Positions 2,810 through 15,717 of a stretch of 33,097 nucleotides of DNA are shown here, piece by piece. Numbering within the stretch: position 1 is the first letter of the stretch; each line of letters starts with the position of its first letter. Made by a program: the position numbers and the translations under genes. Source of the DNA: Guillardia theta CCMP2712 (taxonomy: Eukaryota; Protista; Cryptophyta); contig NW_005434505.1 of NCBI RefSeq assembly GCF_000315625.1, positions 1 through 33,097 of the forward strand, given 5' to 3'. The notes beneath the pieces are model-generated. The model did not search any database, was not told the origin of the DNA, and worked only from the letters and a program-made list of their open reading frames with translations.

Positions 2810-3725
2810 ATGAAGTTCGGGAAGCGGATTCGCGCCGAGGCGACAGAGCAATGGGCAGATCACTACCTGGACTACAAGGTGAGATGAAGCAGTGCCGGGG
2901 GAAGAAGACTAGGGCAGGAGGGCAGGAGGGCAGGAGGGCAGGAGGGCAGGAGGGCGGGAGGAAGGAGGGCAGGAGGGCAGGAGGGCAGGAGGGCAGGAGG
3001 GCAGGAGGGCAGACGTAAGGGGGGGGAGGGAGCAGCAAGGGTTGACGGGAGGAGAGGGAGAAGTGAGTATGAGGGGAGGATCAGAGGAAGAGGAGGATAT
3101 GCTACTCTCGATGCGTCAGGTCTGACCGCTGTGCTCATCAGGATCTGAAGCACAAGCTCAAGGCCCTGGTGGAGGACGGAGCACCTGCAGCGTCGGAGGA
3201 GAAGTTCAGGAGCGCGATCCTTGCGGAGATCGACAAGGTGAGGAGACGGTGGTCAGCTGACGTTGAAGGCTGACGGGACCGCAGGTTGACAGGTTCTTCC
3301 TGAACCAGGAAACGGAGCTGTACACAGAGTGAGTGGCGGAGGAAGGGGGAGAGAGCGGAAGCAGGGAGAAGGGAGTAGGGAGGGAGGGAGGGGATTAGAA
3401 ACTGAGGTCAGGATATTTCGGCCAGGGTTAGGAAGTCCAGGTGGACAGGTAGGAGGACGGGGAGCAGAGGGGAGGGGGGAGCAGAAGATGGAGGGAGTGA
3501 GGGAGAAAGAGATGGAAACAAAGGACGGGAGGAGGAGGAGGAGGAACTGAATTCTGACGCTGTTGCACAGGTTTCGTTCACTGTGCCAAGAAGCTTCGAC
3601 CGTCAAGGTCGATCACTCGCCTGAGCGTGCAGCAGCTTCGAAATGTAAAGCTGGACACTTGCGGTTGGATGCCCTGGTTAGGATGAAGAAGTGTCGGGGA
3701 TGACGATGACGACGATGATGATGAC

Positions 3726-3786
<61 letters not shown>

Positions 3787-6437
3787 CAGGAGCTCTCACG
3801 ATTGCTGATACTTCGCAGGTTTCATCACTGGAAGGAACGTCGGCAGGAAAGATGATTCAGTCTCTTCTTCAGTTTTCAGCTAAGGTGAGGACGAGGAAGA
3901 CGACGAAGGAGGGAGGGAGGGAGTCGGGAGGAGGAGGAGGAGGAGGAGGAGGAGGAGGAGGAGGAAAAGGAGGAGTACGTTGTCCTCTGAGCAACAGTGG
4001 GCAGGTCGACAGCCTCCGCAAGTTCGTCATGCTCAACAGCCTGGCCGTCATCAAGATCACCAAGAAACACGACAAGCAGTCAGCCGTGCAGCTGCGGTGG
4101 GAGATGATTCAGCATGTTCACCGGCGGCACTTTTACAGCTCCAGGAGGTTTGGCTCCCTCATCACCGACGTCGAGGTCCTCGCGTCGGAGGTCATGCATA
4201 GGGTCACCCTCTTCAAGCCCCTCCCCGAGAGCTACTCCTGCCCCATCTGCCTTGGCCTCCTCTGTAACCCGGTGAGCCGCAGCCCGTCCTCCCTCCTCCT
4301 TCTCAGCCTCCATCCTTTCTGCTATCTGTGCCCTCTTCCCCACTTCCCTTCTCCTCCTCCTCGTTCTCCTCGACTCCATCTGGTTTATTCTCCTCCCTCC
4401 TCCNNNNNNNNNNNNNNNNNNNNNNNNNNNNNNNNNNNNNNNNNNNNNNNNNNNNNNNNNNNNNNNNNNNNNNNNNNNNNNNNNNNNNNNNNNNNNNNNN
4501 NNNGAATCGTCCGGCCTCCAGCAACTCTTCCATGTCCACCCCAGCAAGTCTCCAGCTGCGTGCGGGGCCTCCAAGAGGACCACGTGGAGATGGAGGAGGT
4601 GGGCATGGAAGTCCGTCCAAGGCTCAAGAGGAGGAGCGTCGGGCAGGGAGGCAAGCAGGCGCTAGGAGGAAGACCGCAGACAGAGTCGGAGCTACAGGTG
4701 CTCCTGCTCCTGCTCCTGCTCTTGCTCCTGCTCTTGCTCCTGCTCCTGCTCTTCTCCTCCACATCCCTCCTCCCCTGACCTCACCCCTCATCCTCCGCTT
4801 CCTCGTCTTCCTCCTTTGCCTTCCCTGCTTTTTTGTTTTTGATGATTCTCCTTTCCTCTTCTCCTCCCGGCTCACTGAACCCCAACTCTCCTTTCTCCTG
4901 CTCGATCCTCTCTCACGCAGCAGCAGGCACCTCCCATCCTCCTCAACGCTGCTCTCCTTCGTTCTCACTTCAACCTCCCGCTCAACGATGCGGCTCGTCG
5001 CCTCGGTAGGAAGAGGAGGGGGGAGGGGGGAAGGCACAGCGGTGGAGGAGAAGGACAGAGCGACATGAGAAAGGAAGAGAACAAAGAGGAGGAGGAGGAG
5101 GACGAGGACGAGGAGGAGGAGGAGGCTGATAATTGGACCAGGTGTGTGTGCGACGGCGATCAAGAAAGTTTGTCGCAAGATGGGCATCAAGCAGTGGCCG
5201 CACAGGAAGTTGAAAGCCGTTGAGAAGCGACTCGCTCTCCTCCAGGTCCCTTGCTTTCTCCATCTCCTGTTCCATCTCCTCGCCTCGATCCTCCCCTCCC
5301 TCTCCTCCTTCCTCCCTGCCTTCCTCCTTCCTCTCTGCCTTCGTCCTGCTCCCTCACCCTACCTTCGCTCCTCGCTCCTCGCTCCTCCTTTACTTCCCCT
5401 CCCTCTTCGCTTCCTTACGACGCCATAGGCGGAGCACAAGTACGTGAGCGAGGAGACGTTGTTCGCCAAGTACCAGGCGGAGATCAAGGAGCTGGAGGAG
5501 AAGCGCGACAAGCTTCTGCAGGGCCTCGACTGCGACGTTGCTGACGTGGCGGATGCGGAGGACGCCAAGAAGTCGGTGACTCCATCCCGCAAAGTCAAGG
5601 TGGAGCCCAGCACGGGCCTGCGCTCTCCCACCTCCTCCAGCAGGACGTACCCGCTCTCCCCAGCTCGGGAGACGCTGGACGAGGATGACGAGGAGGAGGA
5701 GGAAGAGGAGGACCTTGGGGAGATGCCTGCGGCAGTGGAGCAGGAGGGGATCGCCGGAGGAGGTGACGGGGCGGAGCAGGACGTATGGGAGATGCTGCAC
5801 AGGATGGTGTCGGAGGAAGGGGAGGACACCCTAGGCCTCAACGAGCAGGCCAAGGCTCATCCAGCTCCTACTCCAGCTCCTCTTCCTGCCTCTGCTGCTG
5901 CTCAGGATGTCACTTGCTCGCTCCCTCCAAGCTCCTCGGGGCCAGCTCCAGGTCAGCAGTTCCCTCGTCTCCTCCCTTGCTCACCTGCCGCCCAAGGCAC
6001 CACCGACGTAGTTGACGAGTACCGAGACCTCCGAGCCCAGCTGGTCGCCCTGCAGGAGGAGATTCTGCACCTGCGGCAATTCAGCATGGCGCTGCTCAAG
6101 GAGAGGGGAGACATTGCTTCCCAGCTCCAGGGACGCGAGGAGGAGATCAGTAAGTCCCGCCTCTCCCGTCCTCCCCGCCTCCTGACTAACTTCCTTCCCA
6201 GGAGACCTCCAGCAGCGGTGCCACTCTCTAGAGTCCCAGCTCATCCTGGTGAGCTCCCCTCCATCATCCAGTAGGACCTGAGCTGACGCCCTGCAGGCGA
6301 GGACGAGCGATCATGGGAGCGAGGAGCTGCTGACCCCTTCGACGCTCTCCCTCCCTCCTGCCTCCTCCTTCTCCAGTCTCCTCAGCGATAAGCTGATGCA
6401 GGGGAGGGCCGGTGTGCGGCAAGGCGAAGACTTGTAA
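2810..6437 (+). CDS. Putative SPX - RING - RWP-RK - coiled-coil protein (model spans a 100-N gap)
   Basis: Exons 2810-2878, 3142-3237, 3285-3328, 3571-3676, 3819-3884, 4005-4271, [gap 4404-4503], 4504-4697, 4921-5005, 5142-5245, 5429-6149, 6202-6248, 6297-6437; visible junctions are GT-AG and phase-consistent. SPX: MKFGKRIR..W..HYLDYK|DLKHKLK, EIDK|VDRFF, LRKFVMLNSLAVIKITKKHDK. RING start: YSCPICLGLLCNP. RWP-RK: LLRSHFNLPLNDAARRLG|VCATAIKKVCRKMGIKQWPHRKL. Individual domains are well supported; continuity across the gap is inferred. Confidence 0.75.
2912..3010 (+). repeat. (GGGCAGGA)n octamer tandem repeat in intron 1 of the SPX gene
   Basis: Roughly ten copies of gggcagga with one interruption. 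Confidence 0.85.
3698..3786 (+). repeat. (GAT)n microsatellite, intronic
   Basis: GAT/GAC triplet run read directly. Confidence 0.9.
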
Positions 6438-6829: not shown

Positions 6830-8250
6830 CTACCCGGACCACCTGCAACGCTCCCGGTCCGTCACATCCGAGGCTCCCGCACCTCCCCCTTGTCCCGCAC
6901 CTCAGTGCTCCCGGAGTCCGCGGCCCCGAGCTTCTCCAGTCAGCCAGTCGGGGGTCTGCTCGATCACAGGAGGATCCCAGCTAGCCCCGCGGGGACTGAG
7001 CCGCGATGTAGCCTGCCAAGTCGGAGTGCCGGTGACCAGCGGCTCAGTTGCTAGGCGGCGGAGGCGGCCGGGCCCGGTACCTGAGGCTTGAGGTACAACC
7101 GTGACTCAGAAGAGCCTTCCGAAGGCTACCGTACTAGCTATACTTCCGGTGGCAGTCACTGATCATCGGCAGTGATCTCAACTTTCTCAGTCAGTGACTT
7201 CGGAAGCCTGGCAAAGATGCGCCCGCCGCCGGGGCTTCAACCGTCACAGTGAACGGCCGCGGAGACTCGGCACGGCGGTCACGGTCCGGGTCAGGGTCAC
7301 CGGGTGGCAGCCCTGAACCGCCTTGATCATGGGAGCGCCGGGCAGCCTCCGGACACCTCGGAGCAGGCCAGTACGGATCGGATAACCGTTCGGGGCTGAG
7401 TGCCGCCGCCGCGCGGCCCGGCCGCCCGGCCGCGCGGCGACTGACCGGCTCACAGTCAGTCACCGCCGGCTCGGTCGGCCCCCGCGCCGCGGGCGGCCGG
7501 GCCGCCCGGCCGCCGGGGTGCGCCCCGGCCCGGCCCCGGCCCGCCGGCCCGGCCAGTGCGCCCGGGCGGTGCCGCGTGCATCCGAGTGCCACGGAGAGTC
7601 GAGACGGTCCGATCACTGAGTCATGATCACTGACCGTCAGTGACGACGGTCCGGGGCACCAGTCCACTGAACGGTCACGGTCACCTGGCACAGTGACACG
7701 AGTCCGATCACTGCCGGGCCTGACCGCCGGGCCCGGGGGAGTCCCGGGTTCGGCGCCCGGCCCCGGTCACTGGTGAGTCGGAGTCACCCACCCCGGGCCT
7801 TTCTTCTCCGAGGCCCTGAGGAGGAGGAGAGAGAAAAGATGTCACTCAGATGGAGAGGCTGCGGCCCCCGGCCCCCGGCCACCCCCCCTAAACCCCCCCG
7901 GGCCCGGCCCGGCCGGCACTGACCGTACAGGCCAGCCAGTCGGAGTCGGATCTGACTCCGAAGGCTTCCAAAGCCTTCGGCTGAAGAGATTGGATGCGAG
8001 TAGTCGGACCGGTACCGGGCCGGGTTTTAGACTGGTTAAACCGTGACCTGACCGTACGGTCACGGCTGGGTTTGCGGAGGTCACGCGACAAGCTCGGTGA
8101 ATCACTGGGCCCAAAAAAACAAGATCCAGCCCGCCTCACGAAGAGCATTAGGAACAGACGAAAGGCAGCATGGAGTGAGTAGCGAGGATGTCGGAGGGCA
8201 GCGAATAAGAGCTGACGTCCCTTGTGGTAGACCGTGACCACCGTGACGAC
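6830..8250. other. CpG-rich, short-palindrome-rich intergenic zone
   Basis: Very dense CCGG/GGCC/GAGTC/TCAC/GTAC words; ORFs are only R/P/G/A-rich noise. Boundaries approximate. Confidence 0.65.
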
Positions 8251-8593
8251 CCGTCACAGATTTAGTTCACCTACCCCACCCATCTCATCCTAAAAATTGG
8301 TGAAATGGGTGGGTGGTGAAAGCAAGCCTCTCGTGAAGGGGCTGCAAGGAGGCCGCTCTAAAACAGAGTTTTAGCGAAGCGATGGAGTTTGAGGCACAGA
8401 TTCTGTAGAGATCTGGATCGTTGCGAGTTCACTTTCATGTCAGCCTTACTTTATTCCAATCCTCCTCCTCTTGTCCCCACTCCCCTCGACCTCCACGCCC
8501 CTTCCACCCCCTTCGCTCCTTGACATCCCTTCCCTCTGAAGTCTCTCGCCCCCCCCCCACGTCCTCCTCTTCGTCGATCCTTAGACCCTCCGA

Positions 8594-8797
8594 ATGGCGC
8601 ATAACCTTCCTCCCCGATCGACCATTAAGATCGTCGACACGTCGCCCTGGACAGTGTACCTCTCCCACTCAAGCACAGGACACGCCAGCAGCCCTAGCCC
8701 ACAAGCTCCTACTCTCCTGAACAACGTCATGAGTGCCCGCAAAAAAGTGCTGCGAAGATCAGATAGCAGAGAGAAGCTTCTGGAACTGCAGGGGTGA
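8594..8797 (+). CDS. Small protein, paralog 1 of the local PPRxTIKI..SPWT family (67 aa)
   Basis: MAHNLPPRSTIKIVDTSPWT...TLLNNVMSAR; shares both motifs with three neighbouring ORFs; ATG start at the same position relative to the motif. Confidence 0.65.
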   Translation: MAHNLPPRSTIKIVDTSPWTVYLSHSSTGHASSPSPQAPTLLNNVMSARKKVLRRSDSREKLLELQG

Positions 8798-9533
8798 AGT
8801 GAACGCTCATGTTGCTGAAAGCACAACCGCACGATGCCGTACGGCGCCAATGATCATCTCCTCCTGAAACGATCGAGACAAGTTTCAAGGATATGTTTGT
8901 AGTTATGTGAACCATGTAGATTAATAAAGCGTGATCAAATGATAGTCACATTGCAGCTCGGCCCATACCCCTCGTGCAAAGCAACCGCAGCAATCTCTCA
9001 CAGCTTCTCGGAGTAAAACTTTAGCGTCCTCACCTGCTCATGGTCGCAGGGAGGTTCTTTATTGAGATTGAAATGATCAATCCGAGCTGTTGATATCGAT
9101 CAACCAGGTAAATCAACAGCATCAGGGATCAGCAGGTGTTTTGAAGGCTTTTTTCGCACTAGTGACTCGTATCTCACCTTTACTTCAAATCAAGCGAGAT
9201 TGCTTCTTCTCAGTCTGTAAAATTGTCCACATTGTAATCTTCTGTCTCCTCTTTCTCTCATTTTGCTCCCACCACTACGTTGTCATTGCTTGTCCTGTCA
9301 ACCTTTTCTCCGTTGTAGGAATGGAACTTGTGAAACAATCACTCAAGAAATATCAGTGAATCTTAAACACTTTGCTGTCAATCCACTTCATATTTTATAT
9401 CGAGGAAAAGATGCTATCAGTGTGAAATCTTACGTGAAGCCAGTAACCATGTAACATTTCATATTCCAAACACTTTGAGTGAGGGTCGTGTCATTCCTTA
9501 CCGACGTTGTAACTTATGTATGTACAGTCCACA

Positions 9534-9713
9534 TCATCCATCGTCCCTCCTCTCCGATGTAGTCAGAGCAACAGCCTTACAACCGCTGCCATCATATTTT
9601 GCACTTTTCTCTGTGTCATGTACGACCACTCCGTCTTTCAGTTGCGCCTCTAACCTAGCGGCCAGGATGTTTGACAGCAAATCGTTGCAAGGGCAGGAGT
9701 GCTTCAGGCGAGA

Positions 9714-9760
<47 letters not shown>

Positions 9761-9872
9761 AGGTTGAAAGCGAGGTCGATCGATGGGGAGGGGGCCTGGA
9801 GGTCCAGGGAGAGACTTGGAGGTTCCTGATGGTAGTGCGGGGGGCAGCAGGAGGTAGCTGCTGCGTCGCCAT
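9534..9872 (-). CDS. Small protein, paralog 2 (112 aa, Ala-Pro repeat linker)
   Basis: ATG at 9872: MATQQLPPAAPRTTIRNLQVSPWTS...CNDLLSNILAAR. This is the C-terminal part of the 9534..10364 ORF in the track. Confidence 0.7.
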
Positions 9873-10427
9873 GGAGGGAAGGGTCACCCTTATGGTGTTT
9901 GTATTAGTTACCACATGTATTGTAGATGACCATTCAAACAGACCCGAGGGCCGTGACTGCAATTTCCTACCATGTGACCTGCGCTTCCCATCCCGCCTTC
10001 CCTGGCCTTCGATCCTTCTCCCCATCTGACACCCGGTGCTCCTCTGACTTCTCCTCCTCCGATGCTCCTCTGACTTCTCCTCCTCCGACTGCTCCTGGCA
10101 TCTCTCCCTTGGCCTTGGACCTGCGTCATTGCCGCCAGGGCGAGGATGGGGAGCAGGGGGCTGATCAAGACAGAGGGTAACGTGATGAACTAGGACGGAC
10201 GAGAGAGTAAGAGCATGGGCACGCGTCAGGTGTGACTTGAAGAATAGGTACGGCAAGTAAAGTCTGTGACCCACTTTCACAGCTTTGAGGTCATTCAAAA
10301 GATGTAGATCTGATGTCTTTTGTTTATTCGCTCGGTACGTCACCACGTCCTTCGACAGGCCCATCTCACCCCTCCTGTGCCCCCCCCCCCCAAACCTTCC
10401 CCCGCCCCCACTCCCCCTCGGAACACA

Positions 10428-10688
10428 CTACAACATCCTCCCACTTGTCCCCCTGCTTATGCTCGCTGCCTTGACCAGCCCCTTGCTCTCTGTCCTCGCC
10501 CTCGCGGCCAAGACGTTTGACAGGAGGTCGGTGCAGGAGGAGGAGGGCTTGAGAGGAGGAGGAGAAAGAGGGGAGTCGGGCAGGGGCGAGAGAGAGGTTG
10601 TAGATAAGGAGGGCTTAGAGGAGGTCCAGGGAGAGACGTGGAGGATCTTGATGGTAGCGCGAGGAGGGTATGGGAGAGGAGTCGCCAT
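10428..10688 (-). CDS. Small protein, paralog 3 (86 aa)
   Basis: MATPLPYPPRATIKILHVSPWTSSK...LKPSSSCTDLLSNVLAARAR; a pyrimidine tract ending ctcacag just upstream suggests a 5'-UTR intron acceptor. Confidence 0.75.
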   Translation of the reverse strand: MATPLPYPPRATIKILHVSPWTSSKPSLSTTSLSPLPDSPLSPPPLKPSSSCTDLLSNVLAARARTESKGLVKAASISRGTSGRML

Positions 10689-11407
10689 AGCGGTTGACAG
10701 CCTGTGAGAAGGACGAGGCGGAGGAGAAAGTGGAGTAGGAGTAGGAGTAGGAGGAGGAGGGAGGAGGAGGAGGAGTAGGAGAAGGAGGAGGAGGGAGGAG
10801 GAGGAGGAGTAGGAGTAGGAGGAGGAGGAGGAGGAGGANNNNNNNNNNNNNNNNNNNNNNNNNNNNNNNNNNNNNNNNNNNNNNNNNNNNNNNNNNNNNN
10901 NNNNNNNNNNNNNNNNNNNNNNNNNNNNNNNNNNNNNNNNNNNNNNNNNNNNNNNNNNNNNNNNNNNNNNNNNNNNNNNNNNNNNNNNNNNNNNNNNNNN
11001 NNNNNNNNNNNNNNNNNNNNNNNNNTGAGGAGGATGAAATGATAAAGTTCAAAGAGAACTCCAGACCGTGAAGGCGTATGAGCTTTAGTAGTGGATGGTG
11101 GTGATGAGGAGGAGGACGAGGAGGGAGAGGGGGAGTCTAGATGTTTCCACGGGTGTGAAAGGAGCAAACGCCACGGGCTGTAAATCCGTGGTAACGTGAT
11201 TTTACTACGTGTCATTGATTTCCAATCGTTGGGTTTTGGAGTACTTTTTATAATTCCTGTTAAAAGTTTTACGGAGTGTTCCGATCCGTAGGTCAGCTAG
11301 GCTCTAGTCATACCTCGCACCCGGAATAGTACCACACATCGGTTGAGTGAAGATGCCCGAGGGGATGCGGAGCCGGGACTGCGAGGACTCGAGTTCTCGT
11401 ACTGCTT

Positions 11408-11428
11408 TTTAACTTAACTTTGAGTAAA
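11408..11428 (+). repeat. Dispersed 21-bp motif TTTAACTTAACTTTGAGTAAA, copy 1
   Basis: Exact match to 32260-32280 and to the reverse complement of 24783-24803. Confidence 0.9.
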
Positions 11429-11871
11429 GAAGTTTGCGAGTTGATATGGCCGTCCGGGGTGCCGTTGAGGCCGTAGGGGAGGCCGGGCCGTCGGTGCTCA
11501 ATACGTAAAGTCTGGAATCTGGAATCTGGGAGCCGGCGGGAAACGGGCCTCAAGTGCAACGATGTTGTCGCTGATGTAAGTATCTCTGAATCGCGACTGA
11601 CGGTACTGAGCCATCTCACCAACACATGACAGAAACTGTAGGACAGGCCTGAGGAGCAACCCAGAAAAAGCGTCACGGATATTGTAGAATGGGCTAAACA
11701 TTTGTCTACGCAATAGGAACGATCATGGTCATCGTCAGGTGCCGGAGATGAAAGTTACAGTCTTCATTGGTAAACCATCGTTCAACTTCGGAAGTTCCAT
11801 CGACTACTATGGTACATCGCCTATCTGAACATTGCAATAAACTACAACCCTAGAAGAGCTCATCCTCATAG

Positions 11872-12117
11872 CTAGACATCAGTTTCTGAATCAATGTGAA
11901 GTGATTTCGCGCTCTCCCTTCTCGCCCTCGCGGCCATGACGTTAGAGAGCAGGTCGTTGCAAGAGGAGGAGGGCTTGAGGAGAGGAGCAACAGCAGGGGA
12001 GAAAGTCTGGGTCGGGAGAGACGATCGCCTTTCAGAGGACTTGCTGGAGGTCCAGGGAGAGACGTGAAGGATCTTGATGGTCGAGCGAGGAGGAGGCAGC
12101 AGGGGAGGTGCTGACAT
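11872..12117 (-). CDS. Small protein, paralog 4 (81 aa)
   Basis: MSAPPLLPPPRSTIKILHVSPWTSSK...LKPSSSCNDLLSNVMAARAR; closest to paralog 3, with synonymous differences in the motifs. Confidence 0.75.
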   Translation of the reverse strand: MSAPPLLPPPRSTIKILHVSPWTSSKSSERRSSLPTQTFSPAVAPLLKPSSSCNDLLSNVMAARARRESAKSLHIDSETDV

Positions 12118-12259
12118 CGAGCTGTCCGTATCGTTTCGTACGAGAAGCAGTGGAGCAGGTGCTTGGAACTTCTGGCTGCAGACCTCAAGATGTCTTGCAA
12201 GAGATCGCTGAGTGAAGACGTTCCAATGATGCGCACGGGCGCGAACAACAGAGGATTAG

Positions 12260-12322
12260 AAGCAAGGGCAGGTACAGGGGCAGGAGCAGGCTGCGGGAGT
12301 ATGGGCTGGGACAGGCAGGAGT

Positions 12323-12361
<39 letters not shown>

Positions 12362-12495
12362 GGCGGGGGCAGGAGCAGGAGCAGGAGACGGAGCAGGAGC
12401 AGGAGCAGGAGCAGGGGCAGGAGGCAGGAGCAGGAGCAGGAGTAGGAGCAGGGGCGGGGGCAGGAGCAGGAGCAGGAGTAGGAGCAGGGGCGGGG
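12260..12495 (+). repeat. (GCAGGA)n degenerate hexamer repeat
   Basis: Read directly; same unit at 9713-9760, 32530-32790 and, reversed, 4698-4750. Confidence 0.9.
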
Positions 12496-13697: not shown

Positions 13698-15717
13698 TAT
13701 TCCATCTGAGTCTACAATGCCATCCACATGTTCCTCATGCATGATCTCAGCACGAGCAGCCTGCAACGTCGACTGCCACTGAGGAGACTCGTCAGCCGTG
13801 GTAACAGAACAGGAGGAGGAGGAGGAGGAGGAGGAGGAGGAGGAGGAGGAGGAGGAGGAGGAGGAGGCCTCACGTGAGGATACATCTCCTGTAGCTGGAG
13901 GTAGACGACAGAGATCCTCGACACTGGGAAGAGGTGAGAACGAGGACTTCAGCTCTCTCCCACCAGCGCCGCTCACTCTCATGCAAGACTGTTACGATGG
14001 CTGGCGACTTGCTCAGTTCCCGGATCTTGGCGTTGATCCTCCTGTCCTCCCCAAAGCTCCTTGAGCCCGTTCGCGACAGAGTCGAGTGGGTCCGAGACAG
14101 AGTCTCGAGCTGCTCCTGACGTCAGCTTTCCCCAAGCTGCAGTTCAAGACTGACTTTGCGGGGAGTCCGGTAGAGCATGACGATGGCGACTACGTGCGCT
14201 CCGTCCGAGGACATGATTGGAACCTGTCTCAACAACGTGAGCACGGAGGAGAGGAAGAAGGTAGGGAAGCAAGGGGAGGGATGAAGGGGAGGCGGGAGGA
14301 GGCGGAAGAAGGAAGGGAACGAGGAAGGGAGGGAGGGCAGAAGGAGAGTCTCTCACCCCAACGGAGACGTCAAAGAGTTTCTTAGCAAGCTGGACACGAG
14401 GGTCTCCAGCTGGGGTAGTCGTCAACGACAGCTGGGAGCGAGAGAAGGAGAAGCACCGAGCTCATCGTCATCCGGGAGGAACTCGAGCTCGTGCCAGTCC
14501 ACGTCGCTTCTGCTCCAGGCCAGCCCGGGGAACCTTCCCCCTTGGTGTAATTGACTTTGTCTGCGAGCTTGAGGAATCTCTCTAGGGCCTCCGTCTTTGA
14601 CTCGTCCTGCTCGTTCGCCTGCGGCAGCGGTCAGAAGCAGGGTAACGCCCGTAGCACCTACATGGAGAGTCGAGTCGTCGAGAAAGCTGTCACCAGTGTA
14701 TCGCAGCTTCGAAGCGTACTTCTCATGCCCTCCCTTGTCAGCTTCGCCCTTCCCCTTTTTGCCTGAGAATGCGGACCACAGCGACCTGTACACAGCATCA
14801 CCTCCTCCTTCCCTTGCTGGTTCCTCCCACCCAGCATCTCCATCGTCGTTTCTCAGGCCGTAGGAACCAAACCTGCTCCTCTTCCCGTCCGAATCGATAC
14901 CGTACGATCCAAACCTGCTCCTTTTCGAGTCGTCCGAGATGTGTCGCGCTATCTTGATGTCAATGTCTGCATCAACGAGTGACTTGCAAGCATTTGCGGC
15001 TCCATCAGCATCGACAAACCGGCCTGGCTCAGGTTAGAAGCAGCATCCTTAGAGTCTGCAGCGCAACTGAGCTTCTCCTCTCACCCCCCCCATATGGCAT
15101 GCTCACCAGCGTCCAGCTTGGAGTCCGTCTCAGGCTGTATCACATCCTCATCATCCTCGTTCACGTTGCTCGACAGCTTCGCTCGATCGGGGATAGCTCG
15201 GTTCAATGGCATCAACCGCGGCGATCGCTGTGGGGAGACTGACATGGGGGTTCGACTTCCTAGGGAGATTCCGGCCAACGAAGGCTCCGCCTGCTTCACC
15301 TTCCTTGCCCACAACTGCCACGGCAGGTATCAGCAGCAGCAGTGTATCCACACCCTCCTCCTCCTTCGTCTTTTAGCTTCCATCCTCTCTCCACTCCTCC
15401 CACATTATTCCCCTTCCCAGCTTTCTTGCCACTAACTGCTCCTTCCTCTTTGGATGCTTCTTCGCCCTTCGCTATCCTCCTATGGACGCTCCTGCCCTGT
15501 TCTGTCCTCCCCTTCCTTCAAGCCAGCCCCTTCCCCCCACCCCCGGTGCAAACTACACCGCGTGCACGGGACTTTCTCAGCAAGGAGCAGCAGCCGAGCC
15601 CCCGCCCCCCCCCCCCCCTCCGCCTCCTCTCTCAGCAGTCAGACACACCTCAGCATAGTCGAAACCGATAGCACGGCACGTGTCCGCGAGCATGCCGGAC
15701 ATCGGAGACAGCGACAT
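13698..15717 (-). CDS. GAF-like domain protein, multi-exon, 3'-partial (runs into gap), apparent 1-nt frameshift
   Basis: Spliced reading: MSLSPMSGMLADTCRAIGFDYAE|LWARK...(long low-complexity insert)...LRYTGDSFLDDSTLH|ANEQDESKTEALERFLKLADKVNYTKGEG/FPGLAWSRSDVDWHELEFLPDDDEL|AGDPRVQLAKKLFDVSVG|VPIMSSDGAHVVAIVMLYR...|WQSTLQAARAEIMHEEHVDG. The GxGxPGxAW, PR..A and VGVPI...VVAIVML elements are GAF-fold-like. The start is uncertain; more 5' exons may lie at 15760-16300. Confidence 0.65.

What the first reader, a model, noticed from the sequence alone, without database searches (positions are those of the whole stretch)
8594..12117. Cluster of four paralogous intronless microproteins with two conserved motifs
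Seen: four ATG-initiated ORFs of 67, 112, 86 and 81 aa (one +, three -) share PPR[S/A/T]TI[K/R]xxx[V/T]SPWT near the N-terminus and LL[S/N]N[V/I][L/M][A/S]AR, separated by a variable-length Ser/Pro-rich linker that keeps frame. Motif codons differ largely at synonymous sites (GAC CTC CTG TCA AAC GTC TTG GCC GCG / GAC CTG CTC TCT AAC GTC ATG GCC GCG / GAT TTG CTG TCA AAC ATC CTG GCC GCT), and I see no similarity in the flanks. Inference: purifying selection on a family of small disordered proteins with two short linear motifs, of a size that gene finders commonly miss. I do not recognise the family; no signal peptide or TM segment is evident.
Basis: partly seen in the sequence, partly recalled or inferred. 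Interest (0 to 1): 0.8.

Follow-up and report, generated by a model that had tools for sequence, protein, structure and literature searches.

The report
Cryptophyte-only small two-motif protein family
Four small genes clustered in the Guillardia theta nuclear genome, three of them missing from the annotation, belong to a real, partly expressed family of mostly disordered proteins found only in Guillardia and its sister genus Hanusia; its function is unknown.

Summary
Four ATG-initiated ORFs carry the same two motifs in the same order and frame:
- c1: 8594-8797 (+), 67 aa
- c2: 9534-9872 (-), 112 aa
- c3: 10428-10688 (-), 86 aa
- c4: 11872-12117 (-), 81 aa

The assembly gap (10839-11025) lies between c3 and c4 and touches no ORF. 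The window is the start of scaffold JH993133.1 of Guillardia theta CCMP2712. Only c1 is an annotated gene.

RNA data show c1 and c4 as short, unspliced, strand-correct mRNAs; c4's poly(A) tail is seen directly. In each, the ORF starts at the first ATG. No RNA was seen for c2 or c3.

A profile search of 1.84 billion proteins found only three true relatives. Two are from the Hanusia phi transcriptome. One is a 78-aa G. theta hypothetical protein present at three loci.

DNA similarity between copies stops inside the ORFs. The motif codons differ 3-4 times less than the linker, and the changes lean towards third positions. Only the proposed frame is open in every copy.

Pfam, PDB and ESM Atlas gave nothing. 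AlphaFold predicts one helix over motif 2 and coil elsewhere.

Verdict: a genuine lineage-restricted family of small proteins. I infer that the two motifs bind a partner. Translation is untested, and c2 may be decaying.

The parts
8594..8797 (+). c1: 67-aa ORF, the only annotated member in the window (single-exon gene model). Motif 1 is at 8609-8653 and motif 2 at 8714-8740.
8516..8944 (+). c1 transcript of about 429 nt, unspliced. The 5' UTR is 78 nt with no ATG. AATAAA lies at 8923-8928, 16 nt before the shared 3' end.
   Evidence: contigs at 8516-8944, 8529-8944 and 8530-8944 in three runs from three studies. Raw RNA reads lie on the + strand only. for the UTR and AATAAA.
9534..9872 (-). 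c2: 112-aa ORF, unannotated. Its linker holds an (AP)n run encoded by an (AGCAGG)7.8 microsatellite. It is the most diverged copy. No RNA was seen and no poly(A) signal was found.
10428..10688 (-). c3: 86-aa ORF, unannotated, with both motifs intact. No RNA was seen. AATAAA lies 100 nt after the stop. A (GAG)n tract and then the gap begin 18 nt upstream of the ATG.
10839..11025 (.). Assembly gap between c3 and c4. It lies outside every ORF.
11872..12117 (-). c4: 81-aa ORF, unannotated. Motif 1 is at 12049-12096 and motif 2 at 11926-11952.
11750..12344 (-). c4 transcript of at least about 595 nt, unspliced and polyadenylated near 11749. The known 5' UTR is 227 nt with no ATG and starts inside the (GCAGGA)n microsatellite. 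TGTAA lies at 11755-11759, just before the poly(A) site.
   Evidence: a 589-nt contig reaches 94 nt beyond 12250. Raw reads lie on the - strand only, at depth about 20. Seven reads carry a poly(A) end at 11749. No splice joints were found. for the microsatellite, UTR and TGTAA.

Best explanation
These are four old tandem or inverted duplicates of a small, intronless nuclear gene of the cryptophyte Guillardia theta. The family is restricted, as far as current data show, to Guillardia and its sister genus Hanusia.

Each gene encodes a basic protein of 67-112 aa, rich in Ser, Pro and Ala, that is largely disordered and has no targeting signal. Two short islands are conserved. The first is an N-terminal extended segment, P-R-x-T-I-K-I-x-x-V-S-P/A-W-T/S. 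The second is a C-terminal amphipathic helix, (C-x-D)-L-L-x-N-V-M/L-A-A-R, followed by basic residues. A freely evolving linker of variable length joins them.

Shown here: the family exists, c1 and c4 are transcribed as short monocistronic mRNAs on the correct strand (poly(A) tail seen directly for c4), constraint is concentrated in the two motifs, and the family split into two subgroups before Guillardia and Hanusia diverged.

Inferred: the proteins are translated and stay in the cytosol or nucleus. They would act as small adaptors or regulators that grip one partner with both motifs, the Trp-containing strand docking by strand addition and the helix packing through its Leu/Val/Met face. The linker would act as a tether and possibly a phosphorylation target. 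I give about 0.75 to 'real protein-coding family under motif-level purifying selection'. I give about 0.3 to the two-site binding mechanism. c2 is the copy most likely to be decaying.
For: Motifs and frame:
- Four copies occur in one frame each. It is the only frame open in all copies and in the related loci, and all start M-A/S-x-P.
- The three start codons of c1-c3 share an ATGGCG context.

DNA similarity:
- It is confined to ORF interiors. c3 and c4 are 78% identical over 183 nt without gaps, and the other repeat families are microsatellites.

Constraint:
- Motif codons differ at 10-18% of nucleotides against 36-47% in the linker for c2, c3 and c4 (Fisher p = 2e-5 to 7e-5).
- Between c3 and c4, 6 of the 9 motif differences are at third positions. 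Motif dN/dS is 0.13-0.50.
- Across 7 family members, mean pairwise identity is 61% in motif 1, 70% in motif 2 and 25% elsewhere.

Expression:
- c1 gives discrete contigs of about 420 nt with the same 3' end in three studies.
- c4 gives a 589-nt contig and strand-specific raw reads with a poly(A) tail.
- No splice joints were found, and each ORF starts at the first ATG of its transcript.

Relatives:
- The profile search gave Hanusia phi P0002 (E = 4e-9) and P0005 (1.4e-4), and G. theta P0006 (1.8e-4). All three carry both motifs in order.
- After adding them, E-values were 1e-23 to 1e-25.
- P0005 and P0006 form a cross-genus pair with support 96/94.

Structure:
- AF2 gave pLDDT 63 and pTM 0.24, with a single helix at residues 52-76 over motif 2.
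- The Atlas models have pLDDT 0.43-0.46.
- No transmembrane segment or signal peptide was found, and the proteins are net basic.
Against: There is no evidence of translation from Ribo-seq or proteomics. No RNA was seen for c2 or c3 in four runs, although holes in contig data prove nothing. Whole-ORF dN/dS is 0.28-0.82 with dS saturated for c1. The choice of motif columns is partly circular. Third-position enrichment is only marginal overall (18 of 38 variable sites, p = 0.05). The sense strand is pyrimidine-rich, so open frames are cheap there: a second frame is also open in c4 and nearly so in c3. No canonical linear motif (PP1 RVxF, calcineurin PxIxIT or LxVP, D-box, KEN, 14-3-3, B56) is shared family-wide, so the partner is unknown. 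The Ser-Pro in motif 1 is Ser-Ala in subgroup B and Phe-Pro in P0002, which weakens a phospho-switch idea.
Confidence: 0.72

Rival explanations
1. Only part of the cluster is functional. c1 and c4 (with the 78-aa relative elsewhere) are working genes, while c2 and perhaps c3 are silent duplicates drifting towards pseudogenes.
For: No RNA coverage of c2 or c3 was seen in three contig runs or in the raw-read run. c2 has the longest branch among the window copies (2.09). Its motif 1 is altered (I-R-N-L instead of I-K-I-L). It has a microsatellite expansion in its linker and no AATAAA or TGTAA downstream. dN/dS outside the motifs is about 0.9 for c2-c3 and c3-c4.
Against: Both ORFs are intact, with the ATG, both motifs and no frameshift, although the linkers have diverged heavily. 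Motif codons of c2 and c3 are still 3 times better conserved than the linker. The c3 promoter region lies in a microsatellite and the assembly gap, so it cannot be judged. Expression may be conditional.
Confidence: 0.3
2. The transcripts are non-coding RNAs, or the conserved blocks are DNA or RNA elements, and the ORFs are incidental open frames in pyrimidine-rich sequence.
For: Open frames are easy in this composition: alternative frames are open in c4 and in the P0006 loci. There is no translation evidence. Third-position bias is only marginal.
Against: Only one frame is open in all copies. It starts with an aligned ATG that is the first ATG of both mapped transcripts. Indels are whole codons. 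Relatives from another genus were detected by protein profile at E = 4e-9 in a library of 1.84 billion proteins, with both motifs in order. Paralogues with saturated synonymous divergence still keep the peptide motifs.
Confidence: 0.08
3. The ORFs are exons of one or more larger genes, or relics of a transposable element or dispersed repeat.
For: Three copies are unannotated and lie in an 8-kb stretch without gene models. Near-identical copies of a relative occur at three loci, including a head-to-head pair.
Against: The RNA contigs are colinear with the genome, have no splice joints, and end at a poly(A) site (c4) or 16 nt after an AATAAA (c1), both shortly after the stop. The annotated c1 model is a single exon. 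There are no terminal or inverted repeats, no flank similarity and no Pfam domain. The full-library profile search has no length limit and found no longer protein containing the module.
Confidence: 0.04

Closest known systems
Guillardia theta hypothetical proteins GUITHDRAFT_119972 / GUITHDRAFT_122248 (78 aa, P0006) and Hanusia phi transcriptome proteins (EukProt EP00960: P0002 at 117 aa, P0005 at 78 aa)
   Same: They are true homologues. They have the same N-terminal start, motif 1 (S-T-I-K-I-A-H/Y-V-S-A-W) and motif 2 (L-L-G-S/N-V/I-M-A-A-R), and similar length and spacing.
   Different: They are uncharacterised themselves. Subgroup B (P0005, P0006, with c1 nearest) has Ala instead of Pro before the Trp and lacks the Cys-x-Asp that precedes motif 2 in c2-c4 and P0002.
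Small intrinsically disordered regulators that work through short linear motifs, such as PP1 inhibitor-2 and inhibitor-3, ENSA/ARPP-19 and CP12 (named from general knowledge)
   Same: The architecture is alike: under about 120 aa, little predicted structure, and conservation confined to two short islands joined by a variable linker.
   Different: There is no sequence relationship. There was no Pfam hit at E up to 10 and no PDB hit. The defining motifs of those families (RVxF and others) are absent. The resemblance is in likely mode of action only.
Taxonomically restricted (orphan) small-ORF proteins that genome annotation misses
   Same: They are short and intronless, lie in an apparently intergenic stretch, are absent from three quarters of the gene models, and have relatives only in the sister genus.
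   Different: Unlike a typical young orphan, this is a multi-copy family. Its paralogues are saturated at synonymous sites and it was already split into two subgroups before the genera diverged. It is therefore old and maintained within its lineage.

Membership tests
Any Pfam-A family | Profile match at or near the gathering score | tested here: not met
   no family for any of the four ORFs at E up to 10. The precomputed Pfam field is '-' for the relatives.
Lineage-restricted small-protein gene family (orphan family) | Homologues found only within a narrow clade | tested here: met
   only Guillardia theta and Hanusia phi proteins were found; no metagenome loci. Caveat: small ORFs are under-represented in proteomes derived from transcriptomes.
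Lineage-restricted small-protein gene family (orphan family) | Transcribed as its own mRNA | tested here: met
   met for c1 and c4 (unspliced, strand-correct; poly(A) tail seen for c4, shared 3' end after AATAAA for c1). Not seen for c2 or c3. The Hanusia members come from a transcriptome.
Lineage-restricted small-protein gene family (orphan family) | Translated into a stable protein | not testable with these tools
   No Ribo-seq or proteomics data were accessible.
Intrinsically disordered protein acting through short linear motifs | Little predicted structure, with conservation confined to short islands | tested here: met
   pLDDT 63, pTM 0.24, one helix only. Atlas pLDDT 0.43-0.46; motifs 61-70% identical against 25% elsewhere.
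Intrinsically disordered protein acting through short linear motifs | Motif-dependent binding to a partner | not testable with these tools
   This needs pull-downs or complex prediction against the G. theta proteome.
PP1 regulators (RVxF type) | [RK]-x(0,1)-[VI]-{P}-[FW] docking motif | tested here: not met
   no match in any of 7 members.
Calcineurin substrates and regulators | PxIxIT or LxVP docking motif | tested here: not met
   no match in any member.
APC/C degron carriers | D-box RxxLxx[LIVM]xN or KEN box at a conserved position | tested here: not met
   no full D-box or KEN. The minimal RxxL matches are at non-homologous positions. The Arg of motif 1 is Cys in P0005.
Transposable-element relic or dispersed repeat | Similarity extending into the flanks, terminal repeats, or TE protein domains | tested here: not met
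   similarity stops inside the ORFs. The only inverted repeat (7726-7908) lies outside the cluster and flanks no copy; no domains.

The most novel reading that the evidence does not exclude
The family is a cryptophyte invention. It would be a set of two-motif microproteins whose Trp-containing strand motif and amphipathic helix clamp a conserved cellular enzyme or complex, such as a kinase, a phosphatase or a chromatin or cell-cycle factor. The paralogues would be expressed differently (c1 and c4 on, c2 and c3 conditional) to tune that target. That would define a new pair of linear motifs and a new class of small regulators in an understudied eukaryotic supergroup.
Probability: 0.25. Interest if true: 0.55.

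Novelty: new member of a known kind. Interest (0 to 1): 0.35.

Why it matters
The result adds three unannotated genes to the Guillardia theta reference genome and shows that at least two of the four copies are expressed. It also defines a small protein family with two sharply conserved motifs, which makes a tractable starting point for finding a binding partner in cryptophytes, where very few lineage-specific proteins have any function assigned. It is a concrete case of gene finders missing intronless ORFs under 100 codons in a protist genome. It does not bear on a long-standing open question, and orphan small-protein families are common, so the interest is moderate.

Tried and rejected
- Word-index protein search with c4 alone found nothing.
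- Pfam at E up to 10 found nothing.
- A PDB sequence profile search found nothing.
- ESM Atlas: c4 and c1 scored 0.75-0.77, which is noise. P0006 scored 0.93 to Actinomycetota hypothetical proteins without families, which I take as Ala/Pro/Ser composition and not kinship. The structure hits rest on models with pLDDT 0.43-0.46 and are meaningless.
- Two metagenome scans with subgroup alignments gave pattern hits but no tblastn-confirmed relative.
- Exact-product look-ups of the Hanusia proteins found no contig, so no Hanusia nucleotide sequence was available for orthologue dN/dS.
- Two profile hits, P0003 and P0004, are internally repetitive proteins that match one motif each. I rejected them as spurious.
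- The literature search for the gene identifiers returned no paper. A general search gave nothing relevant.
- Regex tests for known docking and degron motifs found none shared family-wide.
- I did not run a fold search because the model is too poor (pTM 0.24).
Full report
**Where we are.** An exact look-up placed the 67-aa ORF c1 on scaffold JH993133.1 of assembly GCA_000315625.1. The window corresponds to the first 33 kb of that scaffold. A relative found later is named by NCBI as a Guillardia theta CCMP2712 hypothetical protein from the same assembly. This agrees with an earlier scan note that the genome is G. theta. In the 18.8 kb fetched, the annotation has only three genes:
- an SPX-domain gene at 2810-6437
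- the 67-aa c1 at 8594-8797
- a 230-aa gene at 14501-15717

c2, c3 and c4 are unannotated and absent from a 15-billion-protein collection.

**The observation.** The four ORFs are c1 8594-8797 (+, 67 aa), c2 9534-9872 (-, 112 aa), c3 10428-10688 (-, 86 aa) and c4 11872-12117 (-, 81 aa).
- In a six-frame translation of the whole window, the core of motif 1 (S-P-W-T/S) and motif 2 (L-L-S/N-N-V/I-L/M-A/S-A-R) each occur exactly four times. All are in these ORFs, in the same order and frame.
- The alignment has 17 invariant positions.

**The gap.** The run of N at 10839-11025 lies between c3 and c4. It is 150 nt upstream of the c3 ATG and 846 nt downstream of the c4 stop. No ORF, motif or frame argument crosses it. 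It makes only the c3-c4 spacing (1426 nt as assembled) and the c3 upstream region uncertain. The long ORFs that read through it are artefacts.

**Is it coding, or a DNA repeat?**
- Pairwise blastn with 400-nt flanks shows similarity only inside the ORFs. c3 and c4 are 78% identical over 183 nt without a gap, from codon 8 to just past motif 2. c2 matches c3 and c4 over the same interior, and c1 matches only over motif 1.
- The repeat finder gives the same picture. The only families that are not microsatellites are the motif-1 segment (c2, c3, c4) and a 111-nt c3/c4 block. The only inverted repeat it reports lies outside the cluster, at 7726-7908, and flanks no copy.
- The proposed frame is the only one open in all four copies and in the related loci, and each starts with an ATG.
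- Within the alignable interior, motif codons differ at 10-18% of nucleotides against 36-47% in the linker among c2, c3 and c4 (Fisher p = 2e-5 to 7e-5). The figures are 33% against 67-69% for c1 versus c3 or c4.
- Nei-Gojobori estimates give dN/dS of 0.13-0.50 in the motif codons and 0.3-0.9 elsewhere. dS is above 1 for every comparison with c1.
- Third-position enrichment of motif differences is in the expected direction but weak (6 of 9 for c3-c4; 18 of 38 variable sites overall, p = 0.05).
- The motif columns were chosen because they are conserved, so the low dN there is partly circular. The stronger arguments are the frame, the aligned start codons, the in-frame indels and the cross-genus relatives.

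**Expression.** The runs labelled 'RNA?' hold only 17-18% of the words of 8400-10830. That share matches the c1 transcript alone and shows they are not genomic DNA.
- c1 is covered by a discrete contig in each of three runs from three studies: 8516-8944, 8529-8944 and 8530-8944. They are colinear with the genome and share a 3' end 16 nt after an AATAAA at 8923-8928.
- c4 is covered by a 589-nt contig from 11756 to 94 nt beyond 12250, and by shorter contigs in two other runs.
- In a run of raw RNA reads from 2026, coverage of c4 is only on the - strand (depth about 20, falling towards the 5' end). Seven reads carry a poly(A) tail at 11749, just after a TGTAA at 11755-11759.
- The few raw reads on c1 are on the + strand.
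- No splice joints were found.
- The known 5' UTRs (78 nt for c1, 227 nt for c4) contain no ATG, so each ORF starts at the first ATG of its mRNA.
- c2 and c3 have no coverage in any of the four runs. The tool warns that holes prove nothing.
- c3 has an AATAAA 100 nt after its stop. c2 has neither that signal nor TGTAA.

**Relatives.** A profile of the four ORFs was searched with HMMER against 1.84 billion representative proteins, with no length limit. It returned c1 itself plus three convincing hits. Two further hits, to internally repetitive proteins, I rejected.
- The true hits are P0002 (117 aa, E = 4e-9) and P0005 (78 aa), both from the Hanusia phi transcriptome in EukProt.
- The third is P0006 (78 aa), which is G. 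theta GUITHDRAFT_119972 and GUITHDRAFT_122248.
- All three carry both motifs in order with similar spacing.
- A second search with the enlarged profile found the same proteins at E = 1e-23 to 1e-25 and nothing else.
- Two metagenome scans found no relatives.
- P0006 is encoded at three nearly identical places. Two form a head-to-head pair about 750 nt apart on JH993262.1, one of them broken by a gap. The third is near the end of JH993127.1.
- A maximum-likelihood tree, built on short sequences with long branches, gives two groups: A with c2, c3, c4 and Hanusia P0002, and B with c1 and the pair Hanusia P0005 + Guillardia P0006 (pair support 96/94).
- The family therefore diversified before the two genera separated, and it has kept the motifs since. 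Mean pairwise identity is 61% in motif 1, 70% in motif 2 and 25% elsewhere.

**What the proteins look like.**
- Ser, Pro, Thr and Ala make up 38-54% of residues. The proteins are net basic, and no hydrophobic window reaches transmembrane or signal-peptide level.
- AlphaFold2 with the 7-sequence alignment gives pLDDT 63 and pTM 0.24. It predicts a single helix at residues 52-76 of c3, covering motif 2 and the basic stretch after it. Motif 1 is extended, with the best local confidence (70-75).
- The ESM Atlas models of c1 and P0006 are also poor, at pLDDT 0.43-0.46.
- Pfam, PDB sequences and Atlas features gave no credible family.
- Regex tests for PP1 RVxF, calcineurin PxIxIT and LxVP, D-box, KEN, 14-3-3 mode 1 and B56 LxxIxE found nothing shared by the family.

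**Interpretation.** Three things are shown: this is a real, lineage-restricted, multi-copy family of small intronless genes; at least two window copies are expressed; and purifying selection is focused on two short peptide motifs. The rest is inferred. I propose cytosolic or nuclear disordered microproteins that bind a partner at two sites, through an N-terminal Trp-containing strand motif and a C-terminal amphipathic helix joined by a flexible linker that evolves freely. This resembles in kind, but not in sequence, small motif-based regulators such as the PP1 inhibitors or ENSA/ARPP-19. That comparison comes from general knowledge and is not a membership claim.

The main open points are translation, the partner, and whether c2 (long branch, altered motif 1, microsatellite-expanded linker, no RNA, no poly(A) signal) and perhaps c3 are still functional. 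The rivals 'non-coding transcript', 'exons of a larger gene' and 'TE relic' are each contradicted by several independent results, set out in the Rival explanations section.

**Novelty and score.** One member is deposited as a hypothetical protein. The family, its motifs and the three extra genes are undescribed as far as my searches reach. Orphan small-protein families are a familiar kind of thing in protist genomes and no function is in hand, so I score interest at 0.35.

Noticed in passing
window 11396-11428: An element of about 32 nt occurs inside or at the ends of many different RNA contigs (31 nt to 2.4 kb) in three runs, in both orientations. Most copies have A instead of the window's C at 11405, and the sequence on both sides is unlike the window. 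It occurs once in this window. It may be a short dispersed repeat carried in many transcripts.
   Followed up: partly
window 11026-11084 (right edge of the assembly gap): These 59 nt match, with two 1-nt deletions, the interior of a heavily covered 1.9-3.9 kb RNA contig that continues unlike on both sides. This could be a fragment of a paralogous exon, or a sign that the scaffold join at the gap is not sound.
   Followed up: no
window 10706-10838, 12315-12488 and 9714-9760: Purine-rich microsatellites lie directly upstream of c3 ((GAG)n, running into the gap) and c4 ((GCAGGA)n; the c4 RNA contig starts inside it). The same hexamer inside c2 encodes an (Ala-Pro)n run in its linker.
   Followed up: partly
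L002 2639-2883 and 3636-3872; L003 530-766: The 78-aa relative (GUITHDRAFT_119972 / 122248) is present as a head-to-head pair of 99%-identical copies about 750 nt apart, one interrupted by an assembly gap. A third copy lies near a scaffold end. This is either recent duplication or assembly redundancy.
   Followed up: partly
window 8923-8928 and 11755-11759: The two mapped 3' ends follow different candidate poly(A) signals. AATAAA lies 16 nt before the c1 end, and TGTAA lies about 6-10 nt before the c4 poly(A) site.
   Followed up: no
window 9873-10364 (- strand): The c2 reading frame stays open for a further 164 codons upstream of its ATG, making a 276-aa ORF. That extension has no relatives and no RNA coverage, so it is probably a chance open frame.
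   Followed up: partly
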